Part shown: positions 1-42,127 of the stretch, piece after piece
Numbering within the stretch: position 1 is the stretch's first letter
Layout of the letters: each line of letters begins with the position of its first letter
Assembly: GCF_006345805.1 (NCBI RefSeq)
Contig: NC_043004.1
Coordinates: 58,404,001 to 58,468,000 of the forward strand
Length of the DNA: 64,000 nucleotides
Reading direction: 5' to 3'
Source of the DNA: Octopus sinensis
Taxonomy: Eukaryota
The notes under the pieces: generated by a model
Databases searched by the model: none
What the model saw: only the letters and a program-made list of their open reading frames with translations
Told to the model about the DNA's origin: nothing
Translations under genes and position numbers: made by a program

Positions 1-813
1 TCCCTTCAATCGACTGTCACAAAGTTTCTGTGTACCACATTTCACTCACAAGGGTTTAGTTGGTCAGAAGTAGAAGTTCCTTATTCAAAGTGATGTGCAT
101 TGAGATCAAACCAGAAAACATACAGTTGTAAAAAAGAACTTCTCAATTATACAGCTATGCCTGAACCCATAGGGACTAATACAAGGGTTAGATACATTGT
201 AGTAGAGATGAGCATAATAAACTAACAGATACAAGTGACTTAACAGTTCAAAGTTCATTGCTAGAATTAGTTAATGCCTTAAATTATATCTAAATTCACC
301 TCAGTCAACTTTCTTGCCATATAATTCAGTTAGATGCTTAATTCAGCCATCTCAATTTATGATTCATTAGTCATGTTTTTATCTTCCATCACTATTGCAG
401 TGGCCTTTTCTCCTTCAACTTTCCAGTTTTATATCAACACACCTAAACCATCTCATTGAATTGTAATATTCAGTTTCACAGAGAAAATTGTGAAAGATTG
501 GGAGAGAGAGAGACTATGTAATTTTATTGATAGGGTTGATAACAGACTTGGAGTCAGGAGTTAATTTGAGAAGCAATCTTTACATTAAAGTAATTATAAC
601 ATTAATTTTTCACTTTATATATGTTTTTAATCCTCTCTCTATATGCTCTTGATTCTACTTTTTATTCTCAAGAGTTAGTTCTTGCTTAAGAGGCAGCATG
701 GAATATTAATGCTGTTTTCTGGTGAAGAAAACAAGTACTTGACTTATTTGCTACAGAACTTCTGCTAACTATGGCAATTGTTCCAGTAGCTATTAGTTGC
801 AGCTTTGGTGCTA

Positions 814-1073
814 ATCATCATCATCATCATCGTTTAGTGTCCACTTTCCATGCTAGCATGGGTTGGACGGTTCAACTGGGGTCTGGGAAGCCAGAAGGCT
901 GCACCAGGCCCAGTTTGATCTGGCAATGTTTCTACGGCTGGATGCCCTTCCTAACACCAACCACTCCATGAGTGTAGTGGGTGCTTTTTTCGTGCCATTG
1001 GCATGAGGCCAGTCGGGGGGGGGGGGGCTGGCAATGGCCACGAACAGATAGTGCTTTTTACATGCCAATCATA
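814..1073 (-). mobile_element. Short copy of the RTE 3' end ((CAT)n tail)
   Basis: Matches 21470-21640; similar copies at 38940-39132, 42500-42730, 47685-47840, 53340-53655, 56853-57060 and 61848-62105. Confidence 0.8.
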
Positions 1074-2045
1074 TAGAGCATATAACCATCAGCTGCTTTT
1101 TAATTTCCTCATGAAACTATCCAATTGATGTAATCTTTATAATGTCACTTACTGGAGATATCTTCATTTTTTTCCCTTACTGTGAAGTTCTTAAGACACA
1201 TTTACTGTCTCATCGAGCATGTTAAAGGTTATTTAAGTAACTCAACACATCTGAAATCTACTCATAGTGCTTCAGTTTTGTTACTGTTGCTTATTTGCTC
1301 ATCAAATTTCATTTTTCTTACTTCTCATTTTACATTGATAAAAGGGAAACATTCATATTTCCTTCTTACAAAATTCAGATACATAACTTAAAAACATCAA
1401 TAATATTACATCAAGTTAATTAACAAAATAAAAAGCGTGCTTTTCTTTTAAATTCTTTCCAATATTAAATTAAAAAGTTAAAATCTGGTTATAAGAATAA
1501 TCAACTCGACTCTTTTTTCAGACATTTGGAAAGTGTCTAATTGTAGCAATTTGGATTATAAACTTCTATTATAATTTATAACATTACAAGGCTTTTGTGA
1601 GTAATAAAAGGAAAGGTCTTCTAGTCACATTGTTTGTAATATATTTATCAATATACACAAAGTTAACTGACTCCATGAAACTATCAAACATAAAATATTA
1701 TTTTGATGAATGAGTATTAAAATATAAGTTCCTTAAACATTAAATGGCTACCTATTCATTCATTCAGAGAGAGAGAGAGAAAGAGAGAGGGAGAGAGAGA
1801 GCATCTTGGTTTTACGTTTTTTTTCTTTTTCGTTTTTCATCTAAAATATATACCTTACTAGATAGAAAAAAGAATCAGGAGTATGAGAGTAGAGAACAAT
1901 GTCTGCAATTATTTTCTTGTTCTTGGCTTACGAGCAATAAATCCCACTATCTTACATCAATGTCAGTCACACTTTATATTGATATTATCACACATAATTA
2001 ATAACAACTGTAAAGATGAAATGACAGCATGTAAAGATTTTACAT

Positions 2046-2098
<53 letters not shown>

Positions 2099-2210
2099 AA
2101 ATAAGAAAATGGAGAAATACATCCAAATCAAATATCAGGGTACTTCACGAGCAGTATATTGGATATATGTTATCCCATGGAGGGTTGCATTTACAACCCC
2201 TATCTCAATT

Positions 2211-2253
<43 letters not shown>

Positions 2254-2308
2254 TATGTATGTATATATGTTATAATGGAATAATTACTATCAAACATTGT
2301 GTAAAATA

Positions 2309-2727
2309 TATTGTATAAAGGATCGTGGGTAAAAACAATGCAAAGTAAATGCGAAGTAAATCACAAGAAAACAAATATGTGAATTAATGTAGACTTACCT
2401 TGTATTCAATATTTCGGGGTTATGACTCCATTTTCAAGAAATTGATGAATATTGCCGATGTGCATGTGTGTGAGCCTGTGTGTGGAGTGGAAAGGCATGG
2501 AAAGGTGTTGCTAAGGGGTCATAACCCCGAAAGCAATACCTTTCCATACATGTCCATTCCACACATGCTCACACACACGCACATCAGCAACATTCATCAA
2601 TTTCTTGAAAATGGGGTCATAACCCCGAAATATTGAATACAAGGTCAGTCTACATTAATTCACATATTTGTTTTCTTGTGATTTACTTCACATTGTTTTA
2701 GCCTTACCCATGATCCTTTATATAATA
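2309..2727. repeat. Inverted repeat (arms ~2309-2472 / ~2571-2727), MITE-like
   Basis: aaatcacaagaaaacaaatatgtgaattaatgtagac...tcggggttatgac versus its reverse complement. Confidence 0.85.
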
Positions 2728-3254
2728 CATACACATATATATACAAACAGTGTAATTTTCATATGACTCTCTCTGCTGTTCTGCTGATGAAGCATCTCTT
2801 CTGATGTAATTTCTTCCCCTCCTTTGTCTACTGATTACAGTTTCTTTTTTCCCATGTGTAAGGCACCCCAGCATCTGTGCTTATGCTGTGAGGTATCTAC
2901 TGCATTTCCTCTACAGGTAAACTGTAAGTGAGACTAGAAGTGCTTCCAATACACACAGTAAACAGATTGACAAATGAGCTGAGAAGGTGAAAGGCTGTGA
3001 GATCTTTTGAACTGCGTCTTGCCAAGATCTATCCAACATCTCAAACATTGTTGCAATGAGAAAATGCACACAGTACACTCTGTCTAACCCATGCTGACAA
3101 GTTAAAACAGCTAGAGTCATTTTTTACAGGGCACTACTGCTACTCATACTGGTACGCATAATGTTATTTGGTATGGTTTCTACAGCAATATGTCCTTCCT
3201 ATTGCCAACTGCTTTACAGTGTACTGGGTGAATTTTATTCAGAGGATAAATAGA

Positions 3255-3638
3255 GAAGCACTCCGTTGGTTACGACGACGAGGGTTCCGGTTGATCCGAA
3301 TCAACGGAACAGCCTGCTCGTGAAATTAACGTGTAAGTGGCTGAGCACTCCACAGACACGTGTACCCTTAACGTAGTTCTCGGGGATATTCAACATGACA
3401 CAGAGAGTGACAAGGCCGGCCCTTTGAAATACAGGTACAACAGAAACAGGAAGTAAGAGTGAGAGAAAGTTGTGGCGAAAGAGTACAGCAGGGATCACCA
3501 CCATCCCCTGCCGGAGCCTCGTGGAGCTTTTAGGTGTTTTCGCTCAATAAACACTCACAACGCCTGGTCTGGGAATCAAAGCCACAATCCTATGACCGCG
3601 AGTCCGCTGCCCTAACCACTGGGCCATTGCGCTTCCAC
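3255..3638 (-). mobile_element. tRNA-derived SINE, family A (~385 bp)
   Basis: Reverse complement of the copies at 5322/18777/22400/51185; tRNA-like head with A box tggcccagtggttag and B-box-like ggtttcgattccc. Confidence 0.85.
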
Positions 3639-3949
3639 TAGAGGTTAAATAGACCTTGGTGACAGCTCCACACATTCTCTACAAATTCGCCAGTTGCTTT
3701 ACAGTGTGTACGAGATGCATTTTAATGGTACCAATGCTAAAAAGGTCACCTCATTCACTATTCACCTGCATATGAAGCACAGTGGGTTCGATTATAATAT
3801 CAGATGGGAGATGATGTGCCTTGTGCACTGTAAATATAAAAAGTGCATTTATATCTGTGGGATTGGGTTAAGGATGTATGCATGTGTTTTGTCTGAGTAC
3901 CTCTTTATCTATCTATGTTTCTCTTTTCCTATCTCTGTCTATCTGTCAC

Positions 3950-4500
<551 letters not shown>

Positions 4501-5321
4501 ATATATGCAGGCACACAAACACACACCAAGTACATGGAATGTGTAATGAATGCTTCTCTACATGCACCCTTAGAAATTTTTTTTTTTTAAATTTATGAAA
4601 TGACAATCAATTTATCACTTTCACTTTTAGAAACTTATATTGCAACTTATTTAAACAACATTTATTTTATGCATTGCTACCTTTATTTATTTTTTTTCTA
4701 TTATCACTGTTTACTTATGCATATCAACTTGAAGAATTCTCTACTAACAGAATATATATTAACACTGCTAGCTTAAGGTTCTTGAAATATGCTTATAGGA
4801 TTGTTAACAAAGTTACTAAACTTTTATATATTCAGCATTAGTGTTTACTAACAATCAAACTAATACTGTTCTTCGATATAAAAATATTAAGTAAACCACA
4901 ATACAAACCAATAAAGAAATTATTTAACAATTAAGAAAACAAATATTCAACTTTCGATCATATTGATGTTATGTTAAATATTTACTGAAGGTTAATTATT
5001 TTGAAATAAAATTGTGTATGTGAATGTATGTATAATATTTCTATTTAAGTATATTTTTTGTTTGTGCATGTACATGTGTGTGTGTATTGTGTTGTGCAAA
5101 GATTGTCTTAATTTTACATGTGTCTTTGAAATACTCAGTTACAAAGATGCTAATATAAATTAGTAGATCAGTTGACTGAGCAGTGTGAGCAATCATCTTC
5201 TGGAGCTATGCAGAATCTGTTTACATATGTGCATTTATGCATATGCAGGTGTGTGCATCCTTGAGAGAGTGTCTTTGTGTGTTTCTGTGTTTGTATGCGT
5301 ATATATATATCTACACTTCTA

Positions 5322-5704
5322 TGGAGGCGCAATGGCCCTGTGGTTAGGGCAGCGGACTCGCGGTCGTAGGATCGCAGTTTCAATTCCCAGACCGGGCGTT
5401 GTGAGTGTTTATTGAGCGAAGACACCTAAAAGCTCCACGAGGCTCCGGCAGGGGATGGTGGTGATCCCTGCTGTACTCTTTCGCCACAACTTTCTCTCAC
5501 TCTTACTTTCTGTTTCTGTTGTACCTGTATTTCAAAGGGCCGGCCTTGTCACTCTCTGTGTCATGCTGAATATCCCCGAGAACTACGTTAAGGGTACACG
5601 TGTCTGTGGAGTGCTCAGCCACTTACACGTTAATTTCACGAGCAGGCTGTTCCGTTGATCGGATCAACCAGAACGCTCATCGTCGTAACCGACAGAGTGC
5701 TTCC
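5322..5704 (+). mobile_element. tRNA-derived SINE, family A
   Basis: ggaggcgcaatggccctgtggttagggcagcggactcgcgg head; same body as the other copies. Confidence 0.85.
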
Positions 5705-6713
5705 ATCCATATATATATATCTACACACATATATACATAGATATATACGCACTCATGTTCAGACTCATTACTCCTTACCATCATTCTTCTCTACTACTAA
5801 CCAACATCATCATTCATTTTTTTTTAAATGATTCATCAGACATTTACCTTTCCCACCATTGTTCATCTCTGTTGCTGTCCACCACTAATCTTATACTTGT
5901 CATGACTCATATTCATAGCTATCCCATCACACTGCTCATGCTGTTTCCTATTCAATCATATTACCAATGACTGATATATAGCTACCTATCACTGTCTCTC
6001 TTCTGTTACTCCCTCTCCTATCATCTTATCACTTTGTTGTCCCACCTGTCTTCTTTCATCTTCTTGGTAACCACTGTCATCTATTCACGTTCACAAACAC
6101 ATATATCATGAAAGACTGAAGACTACATAAAGCAGAGAAGTCTATGTGTGTATGAGAAATGTGTATGTAGACGCTTTAAATATGAAATATACAATTTTAT
6201 TTCAAATTTACATGAAAACAAGTAACTTCAAATTGTTTAGGTGTATAAATCTATTTATTACTCATAAATATAGTTTTATTGTAGAACTTGTAACAAAATT
6301 GTTAAATATAATGTTGGTTGCATAAATTAAACTAAGCTTTAGTTTGCTTGAGCACTTTTAGTCTAAAGTCAAAATAACTTTTCATTTTTACACATTAGAC
6401 ATTCACTTTTAAGCATTGATCATCAATAACCATATGATGTAATCTTATCTTTATAAAATACATGCTTTGAATTATTTCTACTTAAGATTGGAAACAACTA
6501 TAGATTTTGAAAATGATCTATGGTTAAATTTATGTTTGATTAAATTAATCTCATTGATTAAACTATGCTTTTTTTTTTCTTGCAATTTGACAGGTTTTAA
6601 AAAATAATTATGAAATTGTTAATATTAATAATGATAATGTTACTTATAATGACTATTCCAACAACAACAACAATTATAATTATGTAATAACAACAACAAC
6701 AACAATAATAATC

Positions 6714-6746
<33 letters not shown>

Positions 6747-6849
6747 GGCCTATTTAAATTTACCTAAAAAAAAAACTGAGCAATTCCAGGGAAAGTTTTT
6801 CTAAAACTTGCCTACTCATGAGTTAAATTTTATTCTTTGGGTTTAATTA

Positions 6850-6953
6850 AGGATCGTCGTCGGGTAGAAGCCATGGATGGTAGCAAAGAAATTAGCTGAA
6901 AGGTATACATATCACTTTTTGGTGCCGCTCTTATCTGTCTTGTTTCTTTTCGC
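6850..6953 (+). promoter_or_regulatory. Distal intronic editing-complementary sequence (ECS) candidate pairing with Kv2 exon 11090-11202
   Basis: 6850-6868 is the exact reverse complement of 11184-11202; 6876-6884 pairs with 11147-11155; 6934-6953 pairs with 11090-11109; all collinear and antiparallel. Confidence 0.75.
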
Positions 6954-7851
6954 TACCATACATAGGTTTTAGGATAAAATTGTTCTTATGAGTAGGAAGT
7001 TTGTCTCCATTGCCAAATAATGCATAATTTTTTTTGATATTTTCTCTTCCTCCTTTTAAAAAATTTACTATTAAACTTCACTTTAAAGGTGCCATAATTT
7101 GTAGTTATAAATAATTTGTGTTTATATGTCATTTAAACTTGCAGAAATTTAAGAGTCCATAAAATTTTACCTCATGTTCCAAATATATGTTTCATCTTCT
7201 TTTCTCTATAAATGATGATTTTCATTTTTTTTTTCTCACATTCAACTGCATTTACTTACTGAATATATTCTTTCTTCATTGTTCAATTATATTCCACTTG
7301 AATTTGTATACTTGCTACACTTAAATATACATATTTAGTTTCAAATATATATACCATTTACACATGTAAGCATAAAAAAATATGAGTGTGAGGGTGCCAG
7401 AGACAGAGAGAGTGTGTGAGAACACATACATATACTCTATGTATACACTCTCACTTCTGCAACACAAAGATACACTAGGAAACCAGCTCATAGATTGTGA
7501 AACTAGATCCACCTTAGTTGTTTCGTTGTACATTTGAAAACAAAAGTAATTCAGCATGCAACAGTTGTCCTAAGTTTCAAAAATAGGGACCAGCATTTTC
7601 TGGGAGTACCTTCACCATTGGTTGGATTTCGAGAAGGTGGTTTATTTTCATCCACGTAATGTCATAAAAATGGACCTAATCACACACTCTTATTATCCTG
7701 ACTGATGCATAAAGAAACTCTTGTAATACAATTACCTCAATTTATTCCACAATGTAAATGCATTGACATGGGGAATTATCTATACACACATTCATCACTC
7801 ATACACACGCACATACACCCCCCACACACACATATGTATATATGTATACAT

Positions 7852-7882
<31 letters not shown>

Positions 7883-8023
7883 TGTTTATTGCACACAGAA
7901 TATAGTTATATAGTTATGAGCTACTCAACTACTCATAGTTACATACATTGAAGATGTTTTCCAGGTAGGATTGAATAACGTGCCTAGTATCTCCAAGCAA
8001 TCTTTAGGCTCAATGCATATGAC

Positions 8024-8984
8024 CTATACAAGTTACAAATTGGAACAAGAGAAACCATGAGAAAAACAAGAGAAAAGTAGATGCAAAAAGTGGAAAAGTG
8101 AAAGAAATAGAAAAAGAAAGGTTTAAAGGTGAAGACTTAAGATTATGCCCTCTTTGACCATAAAACCACAAAGTTAGTTGATGCAGAATAAACAGAAGGG
8201 GTTTAAAGTTTGTGTTACAGTCGCTCAATCCAGAGAGGGTGATGTTCTCCAATTTGCCAAAAGAAACTTGTCCATATATATGCATTTGCTGAAAATTTCA
8301 GATCTGCAATTCAGCAGCATGGTGGAATTCTTAGATCTGAAAAGGATATATGATCTTTCAGCTACTCATGACTCACATTCTTTAGATCCATTAACATATG
8401 GCATTATATGAAGTAGATGTAACAGCAATGCTACATGATAATGTGACCAAAAAGGACTATTGCAAAGATGACTTCAAAAATGCTAACTGCCTATCTACTT
8501 TCCAGCACGTGGACAAAAGTAATGTTAATAAGTTGGCTATCCACATTTGAGGTTTAAAGACCAATTCCATGCCACATAAAATCAAGTGGAATAGTGTAGA
8601 AAAAGTCATGCCATATATTAATGGATTAAAGAAATGCATCTTATGTGTAGCTGAAAAATCACATACTTTTTAGAGCTAAAGAATTCCACTTCACTGCTAA
8701 ATTCCAGATCTGAAAGTTTCAGCAAATGCATATATATGGACAAGTTTCTTTTGGTGAATTGGAGAATACCACCATCTCCATATTCAGCAGCTATGTTGCA
8801 GACTTTAGACCCCTTCTCTTGATTCTACATTAACTAGCTTTATGGCTTTATGGTCAAAGGGTATATAACACTAATTTTTCTTCTTTCACCATTTTTTTTT
8901 TGTTTCTGTTACCCTTTCACTTTTTGCCCCCACCTTCCTCTCATTTTTTGTCTTATGATTTCTCCTGATTTATAACTTGTATAG
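8024..8984. repeat. Large diverged inverted repeat (arms ~8024-8404 / ~8608-8984)
   Basis: Core 8257-8306 versus 8705-8754 is 49/50 complementary. Confidence 0.85.
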
Positions 8985-9167
8985 ACCATGTGTACAGAGC
9001 CTGAAGTTTGCTTGCAGACACTAGGCATGTTATTAAAATCTGCTTAGAAAACATTACCGTTGTATGAACTGTTTGTAACTATATACCATGTAGAGTAAAC
9101 AATATACATGTATATGTATGTATATATGCATATGTATATATATGAATATATATATTATTTGTATGAT

Positions 9168-9257
9168 AGATAGATAGATAGATAGATAGATAGACAGATA
9201 GATAGATAGATAAATAGATAGACAGATAGCTAGATAGATAGATAGATAGATAGACAG
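9168..9257. repeat. (GATA)n tetranucleotide array
   Basis: Direct inspection. Confidence 0.95.
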
Positions 9258-9722
9258 AAAGATTAACATTTATACTAACTCCTCCTGTATTTTAATAGAC
9301 TTAGTTCTCATTTCCTACACTATTTTCCAGGAGGTTAAACATACTTAAAATATTTCTCTTTCAAAAATAGAAACTACATACACCCCCAACCCCCACAAAA
9401 ACAATGAAAGCAAAATCTTGAATTCAACTTTGTCAGTTGTTGATAATCAGCAAGAATAAATGTCCGTACATTAATGCATGTACACCTACACACACGCGCA
9501 CATACACACATGCACTCATATGCATACACACACTCCCCCATCATTTTTTTTTTATTCAAAATCTTTTCATATACCCTAAAATATTTTTCCTTTTTTTTTG
9601 CAGTACAGCTTGAAACCTATTTCATATAAATGTTATTTTCATTCTTGATATAGTTATTGTTTTTTTACCTATCAATGGCTTTGCTTATATTCTTATATAT
9701 TGTATATTTATTTTTGGTTTGT

Positions 9723-9754
<32 letters not shown>

Positions 9755-9759
9755 AATAT

Positions 9760-9791
9760 GTTATCCCTGCTTCTTGTTCTCTTCCAGCTTT
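9760..9791 (+). promoter_or_regulatory. ECS candidate pairing with the S1-S2 linker coding region 10679-10711
   Basis: Reverse complement aaagctggaagagaacaagaagcagggataac aligns to exon aaaggtgaaggagagcaggaaggggctgataac; several of the differences are G-U compatible. Confidence 0.5.
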
Positions 9792-9996
9792 TATTAGTGA
9801 TTACTTCCAATTTTCAGACTTCTTTATAAATATGCTTATACAGTATATGTATATATATACATTTATTACATATATATATATATAATATATATATATTATA
9901 TATATATATATAATATTTATATATATGTATAAGTATATATTTAGTATATTTATGTATGTATTTATATATTCCCATACATACTATCTGCTATTCTGT

Positions 9997-10119
9997 GGAT
10001 TGTCAGCGTAACAGCTAGCACACCTCTTCATGTACAGCATCCACTACCAATTTAGTGGCTAAAGCTGGCTGCTATAAAAATATCAAAGCCGTCTCCTACT
10101 GTCCCTATGGATGACCCAC
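9997..10119 (+). promoter_or_regulatory. Proximal intronic ECS candidate pairing with the Kv2 pore/S6 coding region 11143-11265
   Basis: Three collinear helices (10005-10024:11237-11256; 10029-10050:11214-11235; 10088-10103:11164-11179), mostly Watson-Crick and G-U pairs. Confidence 0.8.
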
Positions 10120-10126
10120 AATTATT

Positions 10127-10382
10127 TACTACTACCACCACCACTATTATTACTATTACAATCATTACTATTACTACTACTACTTTTACAACTACTACTG
10201 CTACTACTACAACTACTATTACTACCACTACTACTACTAATACTACTACCATCTCCGCGTCCTCCATTACTACTACTACCACCACCTCCACCTACTACTA
10301 CTACTACTGCTACTACTACTACTACTACTACAACTACTATTACTACTACTACTACTACCATTACTACTACTACTACTATTCA
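10127..10382. repeat. Imperfect (TAC/ACT)n trinucleotide array
   Basis: Direct inspection. Confidence 0.95.
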
Positions 10383-10589
10383 TAGCATATCTTACATATG
10401 CTACTTTGCTTTCAACTGTCTTTCTTCCAATTTTTTTTTTTTAAATTCCTTACCCACTCCTTATCTTGTCAAAGTCATGCTTTGGTGTGAGTAACAGCTT
10501 ACTATTATTTATTTAAGTCCCTATCTAGGAGTATCTTTTAAGAGATCCATTCGTTAACCTGTGTATTTTTTCAGCGTTACCAGAATTTG

Positions 10590-10603
10590 AAAACATTTTT
10601 CAG
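10590..10603 (+). promoter_or_regulatory. 3' splice acceptor of the Kv2 exon
   Basis: aaaacatttttcag|GTC; puts the conserved S1 start (V-L-A-I-V-S) in frame. Confidence 0.85.
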
Positions 10604-11680
10604 GTCTTGGCCATTGTGTCCATTCTCTTCATTGTCCTGTCTACCGTGGCGCTAACATTAAACACAATTCCTGGGCTCAAAGGTGAAGGAGAGCAGGAAG
10701 GGGCTGATAACCCACAGCTTGCAATTGTAGAAGCTGTTTGCATTGGATGGTTTACCTTGGAATATCTGGGACGATTCTGGGCCTCCCCGAATAAGTGGAA
10801 ATTTTTCAAAGGACCTTTGAACATTATAGACCTATTGGCAATCATGCCTTATTTCATTTCCCTAGGATTGACTGAGACCAACAAGAGTACGACGGAACAG
10901 TTCCAAAATGTCCGCAGAGTGGTGCAAATCTTTCGAATAATGAGAATTCTGCGAATTCTAAAACTTGCAAGACATTCAACTGGTCTGCAATCCTTAGGGT
11001 ACACTTTACAGAGAAGTTATAAAGAGCTAGGTCTATTAATGATGTTTTTGGCCATTGGAATACTCTTATTCTCAAGCCTTGCCTACTTTGCGGAAAAAGA
11101 CGAACCAGGAACTAAGTACGTTAGTATCCCCGAAACATTCTGGTGGGCTGCCATCACTATGACGACGGTAGGATATGGTGACATCTACCCGACGACGATC
11201 CTGGGAAAAGTTGTTGGTGGCGTATGTTGTATTTGTGGTGTGCTAGTTATTGCGCTTCCAATTCCAATCATTGTCAATAATTTCGCCGAATTTTATAAAG
11301 ATCAGATGAGAAGAGAAAAAGCATTGAAACGTAAGGAGGCTCTCGAGCGGGCGAAGAGGAATGGAAGCATAGTCTCCTTCCACTCCGTCAATCTGAGGGA
11401 TGCCTTCGCCAAAAGTGTCGACTTAATGGATGTTGCCTCCGAGGTTCCTAGAAACGACTGGGATACAAACAGTGTGGAGACGAAATCCATGAGTTCACCA
11501 CCGCCTTGTGTGATGCGGGGCTCAAACCCCAATACACCCAAGTTGAGTGGGCAAGGTGGAACAACAAACTTCAACTGCAAAGAGAATCAGGAAAATCCCA
11601 GCAACACCAACCTGTTGGATATAGATGAGGAGTCTTTGCATCGGATGACGACCCAAGCTTCAACTGATACTTCAATGCAG
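10604..11680 (+). CDS. Shab: Internal coding exon (359 codons, phase 0 at both ends) of a Shab/Kv2 (KCNB-type) voltage-gated potassium channel: S1-S6, pore and proximal C-terminus
   Basis: Translation [21 protein letters not shown] (S1)...[29 protein letters not shown] (S4)...[18 protein letters not shown] (pore)...[20 protein letters not shown] (S6 with the Kv2-type PIP)...[23 protein letters not shown] (Kv2 proximal C-terminus). Bounded by ttttcag (10601-10603 = CAG) and GTGAGT (11681). The N-terminal T1 exon(s) and distal C-terminal exon(s) were not found in the window. Confidence 0.97.
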
Positions 11681-11686
11681 GTGAGT
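11681..11686 (+). promoter_or_regulatory. 5' splice donor of the Kv2 exon
   Basis: CAG|GTGAGT, a perfect consensus; the sequence turns AT/pyrimidine-rich immediately afterwards. Confidence 0.85.
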
Positions 11687-18775: not shown

Positions 18776-19165
18776 AGTGGAGGTGCAATGGCCCAGTGGT
18801 TAGGGCAGCAGAATCGCGGTCATAGGATGCGGTTTCGATTCCCAGACCGGGCGTTGTGAGTGTTTATTGAGCGAAAACACCTAAAAAGCTCCACGAGGCT
18901 CCGGCAGGGGATGGTGGTGATCCCTGCTGTACTCTTTCACCACAGCTTTCTCTCACTCTTACTTCCTGTTTCTGTTGTACCTGTATTTCAAGGGGCTGGC
19001 CTTGTCACTCTCTGTGTCAAGCTGAATATCCCCGAGAACTACGTTAAGGGTGCATGTGTCTGTGGAGTGCTCAGCTACTTACACGTTAATTTCACGAGCA
19101 GGCTGTTCCGTTGATTCGGATCAACCGGAACCCTCATCGTCGTAACCGATGGAGTGCTTCCATCC
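18776..19165 (+). mobile_element. tRNA-derived SINE, family A, with 12-bp target-site duplication
   Basis: TSD atctgtgtctga at 18764-18775 and 19166-19177. Confidence 0.9.
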
Positions 19166-41114: not shown

Positions 41115-42127
41115 TTAATGACATAGATGCCAACTTAAAGAATGCCACAGTGCTGAAATATGCAGACAACATCAAGCTGTACCTCGAAATAAAGAGGTCA
41201 GATCCTGTACACTATAGATCTTTATTGCAATCAGACCTGGACACAATGCAGAAGTGGATCATGGACTGGCAACTCAAGCTGGCTGTGGACAAATGTAACA
41301 CCGTGCATTTTGGGAGAAAAACCCAGTGTCTACTTACTCCCTCCACAACTCTAATGTCAAAAAGTCTTCGTGTGAACGTGACCTGGGTGTTATTGTCGAC
41401 AGCGATTTGCGTTGGACAAAACACATCGCTAAAATTGCCAAGAATGCTGAGGGTGTCTTGGCATCCCTCACCAAGTCCTTTGTGAGCCGCTCTCCAGCTA
41501 TCTATCTGCGGCTTTATATAGCTATGGTAAGACCTCACCTGGAATTTGCATCACCGGTCTGGAACCCCTATCTTGCCCAGGATATTAATCGTCTGGAAGC
41601 TGTTCAGTGACGTGCAACCAAAAGAATACCCTCCATCAGGCATTTGCCATATTCTGAACGCGTTACTTCCCTGGGCATGGACACATTGAAACTCCGACAT
41701 CTGGCAGACACCCATAAAATTATTAAATTATTAACCATCTTACAAACATTAACTCTGAGCACCTTTTCAAACTCCACCTGTCTAACACCCGTGGACATAT
41801 TTACAAAGTCAGAAAACAGCACAGCTCCCATGACTTTTGGAAACATTTTTTCACGCTGAGAGTTGCTGAAGCATGGAACAAACTGCCAGCATCAGTTGTT
41901 AGTTGTCGGAGCACTGCATCCTTCAAAACTTCCATGCTTTCTGAGATTCGCCAACACTACACCTGATTTTCTCCCCTCCATACACCCACAAGAATGTATC
42001 TGACTCATACATTGTTCGCTTTCCAAACATTTGTACATTACTGCATATACTTTATACGCACTTTCTGACAAGTTGTGGTGCACCCAAGCACTGTATACAA
42101 TAATTTCATTATTATTATTATTATAAT
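41115..42127 (+). pseudogene. 5'-truncated CR1/L2-group LINE (RT C-terminal half, 3' UTR, (ATT)n tail)
   Basis: KYADNIKLY (decayed YADD), DLDTMQKWIMDWQLKLAVDKC, ERDLGVIVDSDL, LYIAMVRPHLEFASPVWNPY, RLEAVQ*RATK; frameshifts and stops. Confidence 0.9.

What the first reader, a model, noticed from the sequence alone, without database searches (positions are those of the whole stretch)
6804..11265. Overall architecture: a multi-element, pseudoknotted long-range RNA structure tiling the Kv2 pore exon across the 3' splice site
Seen: the distal element covers exon 11090-11109, 11147-11155 and 11184-11202; the proximal element covers 11164-11179 and 11214-11265; the 9760 element covers 10679-10711. 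The distal 19-mer fills precisely the stretch the proximal ECS leaves unpaired, and the pairings cross each other (pseudoknot topology). Established: crossing intronic elements direct editing in Drosophila synaptotagmin 1. Inference: several modules, possibly evolved separately, control different recoding sites combinatorially and must act before splicing because the loop spans the acceptor at 10603.
Basis: partly seen in the sequence, partly recalled or inferred. Interest (0 to 1): 0.9.

Follow-up and report, generated by a model that had tools for sequence, protein, structure and literature searches.

The report
Intronic guides for Kv2 RNA editing
Two conserved stretches of the intron upstream of a cephalopod Kv2 potassium-channel exon base-pair with the exon exactly where squid mRNAs are edited (Tyr-to-Cys, Ile-to-Val); this gives a structural basis for a classic editing case, but it is a known kind of mechanism.

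Summary
The window holds the S1–S6 plus C-terminal exon of a cephalopod Kv2/Shab gene (10604-11680); everything upstream in the window is intron.

**Confirmed, far beyond chance, and conserved in a distant squid-like relative (L006):**
- D1: a perfect 19-bp pairing, intron 6850-6868 with exon 11184-11202.
- P1/P2: a collinear roughly 70-bp imperfect duplex, intron 9997-10051 and 10088-10103 with exon 11213-11264 and 11164-11179.

D1 lies in the exon stretch that P1/P2 leave open, and D1 crosses P1, so the pseudoknot topology is real on paper.

**Link to editing.** A squid RNA contig and the Doryteuthis Kv2 cDNA differ from genomic DNA by A>G at the equivalents of 11187 (Tyr>Cys, inside D1) and 11249 (Ile>Val, inside P1, opposite a C).

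**Not supported:**
- The claimed distal pairings with exon 11090-11109 and 11147-11155. Those distal segments pair with each other in a conserved 200-nt local hairpin (7 compensatory changes) that displays the 19-mer in an internal loop.
- Exon 11056-11094 pairs instead with the S4 region inside the exon.
- The "9760" island is conserved, but its exon complementarity is not above background.

**Verdict.** These are intronic editing-site complementary sequences, a new member of a known kind. Whether the elements form at the same time is untested.

The parts
10604..11680 (+). Kv2/Shab exon: end of S1 through S6, plus the proximal C-terminus. Acceptor AG at 10602-10603; donor GT at 11681.
   Evidence: Open frame. 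Homologs carry Pfam Ion_trans and Ion_trans_2. 97% amino-acid identity to the cluster that contains Doryteuthis pealeii Kv2, CAA74748.1. Both exon ends are confirmed by the spliced squid RNA contig L007. The upstream T1 exon is not in the window.
6804..7002 (+). Distal module: a self-folding intronic hairpin. Helices 6804-6820/6987-7002, 6828-6836/6971-6979 and 6877-6889/6947-6959, plus apical stems.
   Evidence: MFE -66.3 kcal/mol, z = -6.1. The L006 homolog gives -80.6, z = -8.4. The consensus has 53 pairs, all paired in both species, with 7 double compensatory changes against 0-3 in slid controls. The island aligns with L006 7755-7833 at E = 1e-11.
6850..6868 (+). D1: a 19-nt guide in the internal loop of the distal hairpin, perfectly complementary to exon 11184-11202.
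   Evidence: -39.1 kcal/mol; z = -8.3. The sequence is identical, and still perfectly complementary to its own exon, in L006 (7792-7810 with 10635-10653).
11184..11202 (+). Exon arm of D1. It contains A11187 (TAC, Tyr195 of the exon, equal to squid Tyr576).
   Evidence: Squid cDNA P0121 and RNA contig L007 have G (Cys) here; all genomic contigs have A. A11187 is the only A in the arm with a 5' U; the other three have a 5' G.
9997..10051 (+). Proximal module, P1 arm. Pairs with exon 11264-11213 in three blocks: 10005-10024, 10029-10040 and 10042-10050.
   Evidence: Nearly invariant between the window and L006.
11213..11264 (+). Exon arm of P1 (S6). It contains A11249 (ATT, Ile216, equal to squid Ile597) opposite C, and position 11219 (the squid Ser587>Gly site).
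   Evidence: A>G at the 11249 equivalent in cDNA P0121 and RNA contig L007. The A·C mismatch appears in the window, L006, L013 and L015.
10088..10103 (+). Proximal module, P2 arm. Pairs with exon 11179-11164.
   Evidence: 15 of 16 positions paired in both species and collinear with P1. On its own it is only z = -1.6. It forms in the co-fold with P1 at -98.3 kcal/mol.
11164..11179 (+). Exon arm of P2 (selectivity-filter codons T-V-G-Y-G).
9759..9820 (+). '9760' conserved intronic island. 9760-9791 can pair with exon 10679-10711, but it also reads as a pyrimidine tract followed by CAG.
   Evidence: Conserved with L006 9406-9503 (78% identity, E = 1e-12). Duplex -35.5 / -33.9 kcal/mol, but z is only 0.9-1.4 and -2.4 / -1.0.
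10911..10951 (+). S4 arm of an intra-exon helix with 11056-11094. It holds the Gln>Arg (10926), Ile>Val (10928, opposite C) and Ile>Val (10946) sites seen in the squid cDNA.
   Evidence: z = 3.0-4.7 in both species. Present in the exon-only MFE and centroid folds. Zero synonymous differences across 10919-10963.
11056..11094 (+). S5 arm of the intra-exon helix.
   Evidence: Zero synonymous differences across 11054-11098.

Best explanation
The long intron upstream of the Kv2 pore exon carries two cis-acting editing-site complementary sequences. These turn the pore-S6 coding region of the pre-mRNA into double-stranded RNA for ADAR.

- **Proximal module.** It sits 0.5 kb upstream of the acceptor and forms a roughly 70-bp imperfect duplex with the selectivity-filter codons (P2) and S6 (P1). 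This duplex sets the Ile>Val adenosine (11249) opposite a C and also contains the squid Ser>Gly position.
- **Open loop.** The duplex leaves exon 11180-11212 as an internal loop.
- **Distal module.** It sits 3.7 kb upstream and is a stable 200-nt hairpin. Its internal loop carries a 19-nt perfect antisense to exon 11184-11202. This forms a second duplex around the Tyr>Cys adenosine (11187).
- **S4 sites.** A third, purely exonic helix (S4 with S5) serves the S4 sites.

So different sites are served by different helices. Editing at the pore and S6 sites must happen on the unspliced transcript.

**Shown:** the complementarity, its conservation and covariation, and the coincidence with A>G differences in squid RNA.

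**Inferred:**
- that ADAR uses these helices;
- that the window's own species edits these sites;
- that D1 and P1/P2 coexist as a pseudoknot (my estimate is about 50%);
- that the hairpin stems flanking D1 help recruit or stack ADAR-binding duplex.
For: **Complementarity beyond chance**
- D1 is a perfect 19-mer where the next-best match is 13 nt, duplex z = -8.3.
- P1: z = 6.4-7.4.
- An unbiased tiling of the exon against 22 kb returns only D1, P1 and the S4:S5 helix as significant, in both the window and L006.

**Phylogenetic footprint**
- The window and L006 are 91.7% identical in the exon, and 8-9 of 15 codons differ synonymously in the C-terminal tail.
- Within the intron they align only at the distal island, the 9760 island, the proximal island and the splice-site neighbourhood.
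- The three longest pairings kept in both species are P1a (19/20), D1 (19/19) and P2 (15/16). All others have 14 or fewer pairs.

**Editing sites**
- Squid RNA contig L007 differs from same-species genomic contig L001, within the exon, only by A>G at the 11187 and 11249 equivalents.
- The Doryteuthis cDNA shows the same two changes plus six more.
- 6 of the 8 fall in the 15.5% of the exon covered by the four helices (binomial P = 3e-4).
- There is an A·C mismatch at the Ile>Val site, and 11187 is the only A in D1 with a 5' U.

**Deep covariation of P1**
- Distant relatives have an upstream-intron complement to the same S6 codons. These are L013 (z = 7.7), L015 (z = 7.8), L010 (z = 4.0) and the chiton locus L003 (z = 2.6).
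- Many third-codon-position changes are compensated. Column 11215, for example, reads U:A, A:U, C:G and G:U.

**The exon alone does not fold**
- 11168-11281 folds at -27.1 kcal/mol, z = -0.23.

**Synonymous constraint**
- The transmembrane core shows 0-5 synonymous differences per 15 codons, against 8-9 in the tail. Differences resume right after P1 ends at 11264.

**Literature**
- The structures directing squid Kv2 editing were stated to be unknown (PMC2606942).
- Pseudoknotted intronic editing structures are established in Drosophila paralytic (PMC4299485).
Against: - No RNA data exist for the window's own species. Editing is shown only in squid relatives, and I could not name the window's species.
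- Only two cephalopod lineages could be compared for the intronic elements, so D1 itself is invariant and shows no covariation.
- P2 alone is not significant (z = -1.6).
- The partner alignments for distant relatives were chosen to maximise pairing, which inflates the apparent covariation. L005 (z = 1.2) and L003 (z = 2.6) are weak. L011, L012 (Elysia-like) and L014 have no such element within ±10 kb.
- A 19-bp helix is near the lower length limit for ADAR substrates (established knowledge of ADAR).
- Squid ADAR2 also acts outside the nucleus (from memory: Vallecillo-Viejo 2020), so some Kv2 editing may not need the intron.
- Nothing here tests whether D1 and P1/P2 form at the same time.
Confidence: 0.75

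Rival explanations
1. Same modules, but no pseudoknot. D1-exon and P1/P2-exon duplexes form on different molecules or at different times, for example D1 first during transcription and P1/P2 later. Each acts alone, and the crossing topology has no functional meaning.
For: - The arms do not overlap, so neither pairing needs the other.
- D1 has to compete with weak local pairings inside its own hairpin loop (helices 3 and 4).
- The two modules have different phylogenetic reach.
Against: - D1 sits in the gap that P1/P2 leave open, with both neighbours conserved. That is an odd coincidence if the pairings never coexist.
- Tertiary and pseudoknot arrangements are functional in Drosophila paralytic (PMC4299485).
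Confidence: 0.4
2. An intra-exon hairpin of the Kv1.1 type (Rfam RF00485, K_chan_RES) directs pore/S6 editing. The intronic complementarity is dispensable.
For: The covariance model matches exon 11168-11281 full length at 65.6 bits, above the gathering score of 51.
Against: - 9 of the 24 model pairs are non-canonical in the match.
- The segment folds no better than shuffles (-27.1 kcal/mol, z = -0.23).
- The match follows conserved pore-S6 coding sequence.
- The squid cDNA shows no change at the Kv1.1 I400-equivalent codon (PIPIIV unchanged).
- It does not explain the conserved intronic islands.
Confidence: 0.06
3. The conserved intronic islands are splicing or transcription regulatory elements, or a cryptic or alternative 3' splice site. 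Their complementarity to the exon is incidental.
For: - The 9760 island reads as a pyrimidine tract followed by CAG.
- Its exon complementarity is not above background.
- The helices enclose the branch and acceptor region, so they could modulate splicing.
Against: - For D1 and P1, chance complementarity of this strength is excluded.
- P1 changes in step with synonymous sites across lineages.
- The edited adenosines lie inside these helices.
- The spliced squid contig shows no extra exon.
Confidence: 0.08
4. The distal hairpin is a small-RNA precursor (miRNA or siRNA-like). Its 19-mer product targets the Kv2 mRNA in trans.
For: It is a stable, conserved 200-nt hairpin that contains a perfect antisense to the host exon.
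Against: - The 19-mer lies in an internal loop, not in a stem arm.
- No miRNA family matches the element; the weak Rfam miRNA hits lie in TA-rich repeats elsewhere.
- The hairpin is far longer than a typical pre-miRNA.
Confidence: 0.03

Closest known systems
Drosophila paralytic (and synaptotagmin-1) editing structures: an intronic ECS plus a tertiary pseudoknot or kissing interaction
   Same: - An intronic ECS pairs with the edited exon.
- A second intronic hairpin makes a crossing, long-range contact.
- Different elements affect different sites.
- All of it acts before splicing (PMC4299485; the syt-1 case is from memory of Reenan 2005).
   Different: - Here the second element pairs directly with the exon, as a 19-bp guide from an internal loop. 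In paralytic it docks onto the intron beside the ECS.
- The loops span 0.5-3.7 kb and the acceptor, not the donor.
- There is no mutational evidence here.
Mammalian GluA2 (GRIA2) Q/R and R/G sites: the classical intronic ECS
   Same: An exon-intron imperfect duplex places the target A in dsRNA, with an A·C mismatch at a highly edited site. Editing must precede splicing (established knowledge).
   Different: - In GluA2 the ECS lies in the downstream intron, close to the site. Here it lies in the upstream intron, 1.1-4.3 kb away.
- Two modules are interleaved on one exon.
Kv1.1 I/V editing hairpin (Rfam RF00485, K_chan_RES)
   Same: The same region of a voltage-gated K+ channel (pore to S6), with Ile>Val recoding in S6. 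The covariance model scores above its gathering threshold.
   Different: - The Kv1.1 hairpin lies entirely within the exon. Here that fold is not supported (9/24 non-canonical pairs; z = -0.23).
- The partner strands are intronic.
- The edited Ile is a different S6 residue.
Drosophila Shab (Kv2) and squid sqKv2 editing
   Same: The same gene family. The window's Tyr195 and Ile216 correspond to squid Y576C and I597V. From memory, they also correspond to fly Y660C and I681V (Ryan 2008, not readable here).
   Different: What is new here is the RNA structure, not the sites. A 2009 paper states that the structures directing sqKv2 editing were unknown (PMC2606942).
Engineered ADAR-recruiting guide RNAs (an antisense stretch fused to a structured hairpin)
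   Same: A short perfect antisense segment flanked by a stable imperfect hairpin (a resemblance only; from memory of that field).
   Different: This is a natural element acting in cis. The antisense sits inside the hairpin's internal loop. Recruitment of ADAR by the hairpin is pure inference.

Membership tests
[quoted passage not shown] | An intron sequence forms an extended duplex with the exon around the edited adenosine | tested here: met
   D1 is 19/19. P1/P2 form about 70 bp at -98 kcal/mol. Shuffle z-scores are 4.5-8.3 in magnitude.
[quoted passage not shown] | A documented A-to-I (A>G in RNA) site lies inside the duplex | tested here: met
   In squid relatives, A>G occurs at the 11187 and 11249 equivalents in RNA contig L007 against genomic L001 and in cDNA CAA74748.1. 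This was not testable for the window's own species.
[quoted passage not shown] | The pairing is conserved or covaries across species | tested here: met
   Islands are conserved in an otherwise unalignable intron. P1 is compensated at synonymous sites across six loci. D1 is invariant, so it shows conservation only.
[quoted passage not shown] | Editing is lost when the ECS is disrupted and restored by compensatory mutation; editing depends on ADAR | not testable with these tools
   Needs minigene or knock-in experiments.
Pseudoknotted / tertiary editing structures (Drosophila para, syt-1 type) | Two long-range pairings whose base pairs cross in sequence order | tested here: met
   D1 (6850:11202) crosses P1 (9997:11264) and also crosses the distal hairpin's own stems. 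P2 is nested. The arms do not overlap.
Pseudoknotted / tertiary editing structures (Drosophila para, syt-1 type) | The crossing helices coexist on one molecule, and the second element selectively controls a subset of sites | not testable with these tools
   Needs crosslinking, long-read phasing and element deletions.
Rfam RF00485 K_chan_RES (Kv1.1 editing hairpin) | Covariance-model score at or above the gathering threshold | tested here: met
   65.6 bits against a threshold of 51, full length 1-114, at 11168-11281.
Rfam RF00485 K_chan_RES (Kv1.1 editing hairpin) | The intra-exon hairpin actually forms (canonical pairs, stability above background) | tested here: not met
   9 of 24 consensus pairs are non-canonical. 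MFE is -27.1 kcal/mol, z = -0.23, and 84 of 200 shuffles fold at least as well.
Rfam RF00485 K_chan_RES (Kv1.1 editing hairpin) | Editing at the Kv1.1 I400-equivalent codon | tested here: not met
   The squid cDNA and the RNA contig keep PIPIIV unchanged. The edited Ile is the one in LVIALP. Low-level editing cannot be excluded.
Kv2 / Shab voltage-gated K+ channel gene | The exon encodes S1-S6 with a TVGYGD pore, and its closest relatives are Kv2/Shab | tested here: met
   Translation. Hits carry PF00520 and PF07885 and are named Shab/Kv2. It falls in the same 90% cluster as Doryteuthis Kv2.

The most novel reading that the evidence does not exclude
The distal element would be a natural, cis-encoded 'guide RNA' for ADAR.

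- A conserved, covarying 200-nt hairpin scaffold displays a 19-nt perfect antisense in its internal loop. That antisense threads into the internal loop of a much older S6 ECS duplex.
- The result is a doubly pseudoknotted three-strand platform. The scaffold stems stack on, or recruit ADAR to, a helix that would otherwise be too short. This adds the Tyr>Cys site in cephalopods on top of an ancestral molluscan Ile>Val module.
- This would show, at one locus, how coleoid recoding sites are added by bolting new intronic guides onto old ones.
Probability: 0.25. Interest if true: 0.8.

Novelty: new member of a known kind. Interest (0 to 1): 0.6.

Why it matters
**A structural basis for a classic case.** Squid Kv2 was one of the first heavily edited messages described (Patton 1997). 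Its Tyr>Cys and Ile>Val sites are shared with fly Shab (from memory), yet a 2009 paper stated that the RNA structures directing the editing were unknown (PMC2606942). Here the two sites map onto specific, conserved exon-intron helices.

**What it makes testable.**
- It gives exact coordinates for deletion and compensatory-mutation tests.
- It predicts that these sites are edited in the nucleus before splicing. This is relevant to the debate over where and how coleoids edit so much.
- It offers a concrete reason for the strong synonymous constraint across this exon.

**Evolutionary angle.** The S6 module also appears in a chiton and in other distant invertebrate assemblies, with compensatory changes and the same A·C mismatch. 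This suggests that S6 Ile>Val editing of Kv2 is older than coleoids, while the pore (Tyr>Cys) guide looks like a later addition.

**Limits.** The mechanism class itself (an intronic ECS, even a pseudoknotted one) is established, so this extends known biology rather than overturning it.

Tried and rejected
1. **RNAduplex on 150-nt windows across the whole window.** The background was -67 ± 15 kcal/mol with a minimum of -109.5, so the -108 kcal/mol for the whole distal element means nothing. I dropped this in favour of exact-match, local-alignment and short-arm shuffle tests.
2. **Local alignment with G·U scored positively.** This gives spurious hits to a dispersed repeat present in both orientations (3331-3385, 5574-5628, 19030-19084). 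They were ignored after the same-sense control showed the same scores.
Not kept in L006, and better explained by a local hairpin with compensatory changes.
4. **A distal D2 to proximal P2 intron-intron contact** (6873-6883 with 10096-10106, 10/11 pairs). This is at background level, so I do not claim it.
5. **A GC-rich element at 992-1043 paired with the exon start.** z = 2.6 and the top RNAduplex hit, but it has no counterpart within L006's 10 kb. Left open.
6. **Rfam.** Apart from K_chan_RES, there were only sub-threshold miRNA hits in TA repeats.
7. **Exact-pattern scans of metagenome contigs for the distal and proximal cores.** No matches.
8. **Papers I could not read.** Liscovitch-Brauer 2017 and Ryan 2008 are not held. 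As a result I cannot say which Ile is their conserved squid I579V / octopus I632V site. The candidates are window A11198 in D1 and A11249 in P1. The Y660C / I681V fly homology is from memory.
9. **Naming the distant ENA loci.** Only Liolophura (L003) and an Elysia-like locus (L012) could be named.
10. **More cephalopod introns.** The other cephalopod contigs in the collection are about 1.8 kb and hold only the exon.

Full report
**What the locus is**

- Window 10604-11680 (+) is one open exon encoding the end of S1 through S6 (TVGYGD pore) and the proximal C-terminus of a Kv2/Shab channel.
- Database relatives carry Ion_trans and Ion_trans_2 domains and Shab/Kv2 names.
- The closest cluster (97% amino-acid identity) contains the Doryteuthis pealeii Kv2 cDNA CAA74748.1 of Patton et al. 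1997. The window is therefore from a coleoid cephalopod. I could not name the species.
- A spliced squid RNA contig (L007) confirms the acceptor AG at 10602-10603 and the donor at 11681.
- The upstream T1-domain exon is not in the window, so positions 1-10603 are all intron.

**Checking the observation**

- An exact-match scan of the exon against the whole window finds one outlier: exon 11184-11202 is the perfect reverse complement of intron 6850-6868 (19 nt). The next-best complement is 13 nt, and the same-sense control also tops out at 13. The pattern tool expects 0.01 such matches.
- The proximal element gives the best G·U-aware local alignment in the window: intron 9997-10051 with exon 11213-11264, score 61 against a control maximum of 51.
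- Segment-wise shuffle tests give z = 4.5 for the pore segment (D1) and z = 6.4-7.4 for the S6 segment (P1). Short-arm duplex energies give z = -8.3 for D1 and -6.6 for P1.
- The large energies I first obtained for whole elements (-108 and -86 kcal/mol) are not evidence. Arbitrary 150-nt windows average -67 ± 15 and reach -109.5.

**Related sequences**

- The only other cephalopod locus with long flanks (L006, a 44-kb ENA contig) is 91.7% identical to the window in the exon. In the C-terminal tail, 8-9 of 15 codons differ synonymously.
- The 10 kb of upstream intron in L006 aligns to the window only at a few places:
  - 6816-6891 (distal island, E = 1e-11);
  - 9759-9857 (the '9760' island, E = 1e-12);
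  - 9934-10112 (proximal island, E = 1e-36);
  - short pieces next to the acceptor.
- I required each pairing to hold in both species at aligned columns. The three longest stems are then P1a 10005-10024:11256-11237 (19 of 20), D1 (19 of 19) and P2 10088-10103:11179-11164 (15 of 16). Everything else has 14 or fewer pairs and looks like background or TA repeats.
- P1b (10029-10040:11235-11224) and P1c (10042-10050:11222-11214) continue P1a collinearly.
- Co-folding the proximal island with the exon gives -98.3 kcal/mol in the window and -96.4 in L006. In both, exon 11180-11212 is left as an internal loop.

**What the distal element really is**

- Folded alone, window 6800-7006 forms a long hairpin (-66.3 kcal/mol, z = -6.1). 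The L006 homolog does the same (-80.6, z = -8.4).
- The two-species consensus has 53 pairs, all paired in both species, with 7 double compensatory changes against 0-3 in slid controls.
Two of the compensatory changes are there (U:A to C:G and A:U to G:C).
- Their proposed exon pairings are not kept in L006.
- The 19-mer lies in the hairpin's large internal loop, mostly unpaired in the MFE and centroid structures. The distal module therefore offers the exon one thing: a 19-nt guide on a structured scaffold.

**The rest of the exon**

- An unbiased tiling of the exon against 22 kb, done separately in the window and in L006, returns only three significant partners: D1, P1 and an intra-exon helix between S4 (10911-10951) and S5 (11056-11094), with z = 3.0-4.7. 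That helix also appears in the exon-only fold.
- For the 9760 island, the best partner of exon 10679-10711 is indeed 9760-9791 in the window and the homologous island in L006.
- However, the scores are at background: alignment z = 0.9-1.4 (window) and about 0 in L006; duplex z = -2.4 and -1.0. The island also reads as a pyrimidine tract followed by CAG. I leave its role open.

**Link to editing**

- The Doryteuthis cDNA (P0121) differs from genomic-derived squid sequences and from the window at eight positions: I391V, Q489R, I490V, I496V, Y576C, S587G, I597V and K675R.
- An RNA-seq-derived contig (L007) differs from the same species' genomic contig (L001), inside the exon, at only two bases. 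Both are A>G, at the equivalents of window 11187 (Tyr>Cys) and 11249 (Ile>Val).
- 11187 lies in D1. It is the only adenosine in that arm with a 5' U; the other three have the disfavoured 5' G (the ADAR neighbour preference is established knowledge).
- 11249 lies in P1 opposite a C in the window, L006, L013 and L015.
- The S587G position pairs within P1, and the window already carries a genomic G there.
- The three S4 sites lie in the S4:S5 helix, with 10928 opposite a C.
- Six of the eight sites fall in the 15.5% of the exon covered by helices that were defined without reference to the sites (P = 3e-4).

**Depth of conservation**

- In distant relatives (about 70-78% amino-acid identity), the best complement of the S6 codons within ±10 kb lies in the upstream intron:

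| Locus | z for the S6 segment | Note |
|---|---|---|
| L013 | 7.7 | unnamed assembly |
| L015 | 7.8 | unnamed assembly |
| L010 | 4.0 | unnamed assembly |
| L003 | 2.6 | chiton; 99% identical to a Liolophura sinensis protein |
| L005 | 1.2 | weak |
| L011, L012 (Elysia-like), L014 | none | no such element |

- Column by column, many third-codon positions change together with their intronic partner. Column 11215, for example, reads U:A, A:U, C:G and G:U.
- These partner alignments were chosen to maximise pairing, so the counts lean towards the structure. The shuffle z-scores are the safer evidence.
- No pore-segment (D1-type) complement is found outside the two cephalopod loci.

**Rivals**

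- Rfam's Kv1.1 editing hairpin model (RF00485) matches exon 11168-11281 above its gathering score (65.6 against 51). However, 9 of 24 pairs are non-canonical, and the segment folds no better than shuffles (z = -0.23). The match reflects conserved pore-S6 coding sequence.
- A splicing-element reading is plausible only for the 9760 island.
- A small-RNA precursor reading does not fit a guide that sits in a loop.

**Topology**

- D1 (6850:11202) crosses P1 (9997:11264) and also the distal hairpin's own stems. P2 is nested.
- The arms do not overlap, so all of them can coexist. Whether they do cannot be computed here.
- The closest precedent is the Drosophila paralytic structure: an intronic ECS plus a hairpin-loop docking pseudoknot that controls one site selectively (PMC4299485).
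- A 2009 paper states that the structures directing sqKv2 editing were unknown (PMC2606942). My searches of the held library found no later description.

**Verdict**

Parts of the claimed tiling are wrong.
- The mechanism is a new example of a known kind, with an unusual scaffolded guide and an apparently ancient S6 module.

Noticed in passing
window 11168-11281 (+): Rfam RF00485 (K_chan_RES, the Kv1.1 editing hairpin) scores 65.6 bits, above its gathering score of 51. Nine of the 24 pairs are non-canonical and the fold z is -0.23, so this is a sequence-homology hit on Kv2 coding sequence.
   Followed up: yes
window 7942-8404 and 8608-9066: A large inverted repeat inside the intron, between the distal and proximal modules: arms of about 460 nt, 74-78% complementary, in four collinear blocks. 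It looks like a foldback or transposon-like element. It would form long dsRNA in the pre-mRNA and bring the two modules closer together. BLAST does not find it in L006.
   Followed up: partly
window 3331-3385 (+), 5574-5628 (-), 19030-19084 (-): A dispersed repeat family with the core CCCCGAGAACTACGTTAAGGGT.C..GTGTCTGTGGAGTGCTCAGC, possibly SINE-like. It gives spurious G·U-rich 'pairings' with the S6 exon region in both orientations.
   Followed up: partly
window 11219; L013 10574-10600: Edited positions appear hard-wired in some genomes. The window has a genomic G where squids have the edited A (Ser>Gly). The distant relative L013 encodes Cys (GDICPTT) at the squid Tyr>Cys position.
   Followed up: partly
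window 10604-11300 versus 11400-11600: Synonymous differences from the squid contigs are 0-5 per 15 codons across the transmembrane core, and zero in 10604-10648, 10919-10963 and 11054-11098. In the C-terminal tail they are 8-9 per 15. Differences resume at every third base right after P1 ends (11266-11281).
   Followed up: yes
window 992-1043: A GC-rich element with a C-run is the best complement of the exon's first 50 nt (10605-10652). It has z = 2.6 and is the top RNAduplex window, and the I391V-equivalent site 10631 lies there. No counterpart was found within the 10 kb of L006 intron available.
   Followed up: partly
L010 about 4241-4360 and 5477-5537: This distant relative has two upstream-intron copies of the S6 complement, with scores of 52 and 53 against a control of 36.
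   Followed up: no
window 10401-10436, 10475-10502, 10553-10603: Short intronic stretches near the acceptor are conserved with L006 (85-93% identity). They are presumably branch-point or polypyrimidine signals.
   Followed up: no
window 6680-6745, 9160-9260, 9826-9950, 10110-10390: Long microsatellites, (AAT)n, (GATA)n, (TA)n and (CTA)n, flank the conserved islands. The (TA)n tract separates the 9760 island from the proximal island in both species.
   Followed up: no
window 41150-41610: Overlapping ORFs on the + strand look like a fragment of a retroelement (reverse-transcriptase-like). I judged this by eye only.
   Followed up: no
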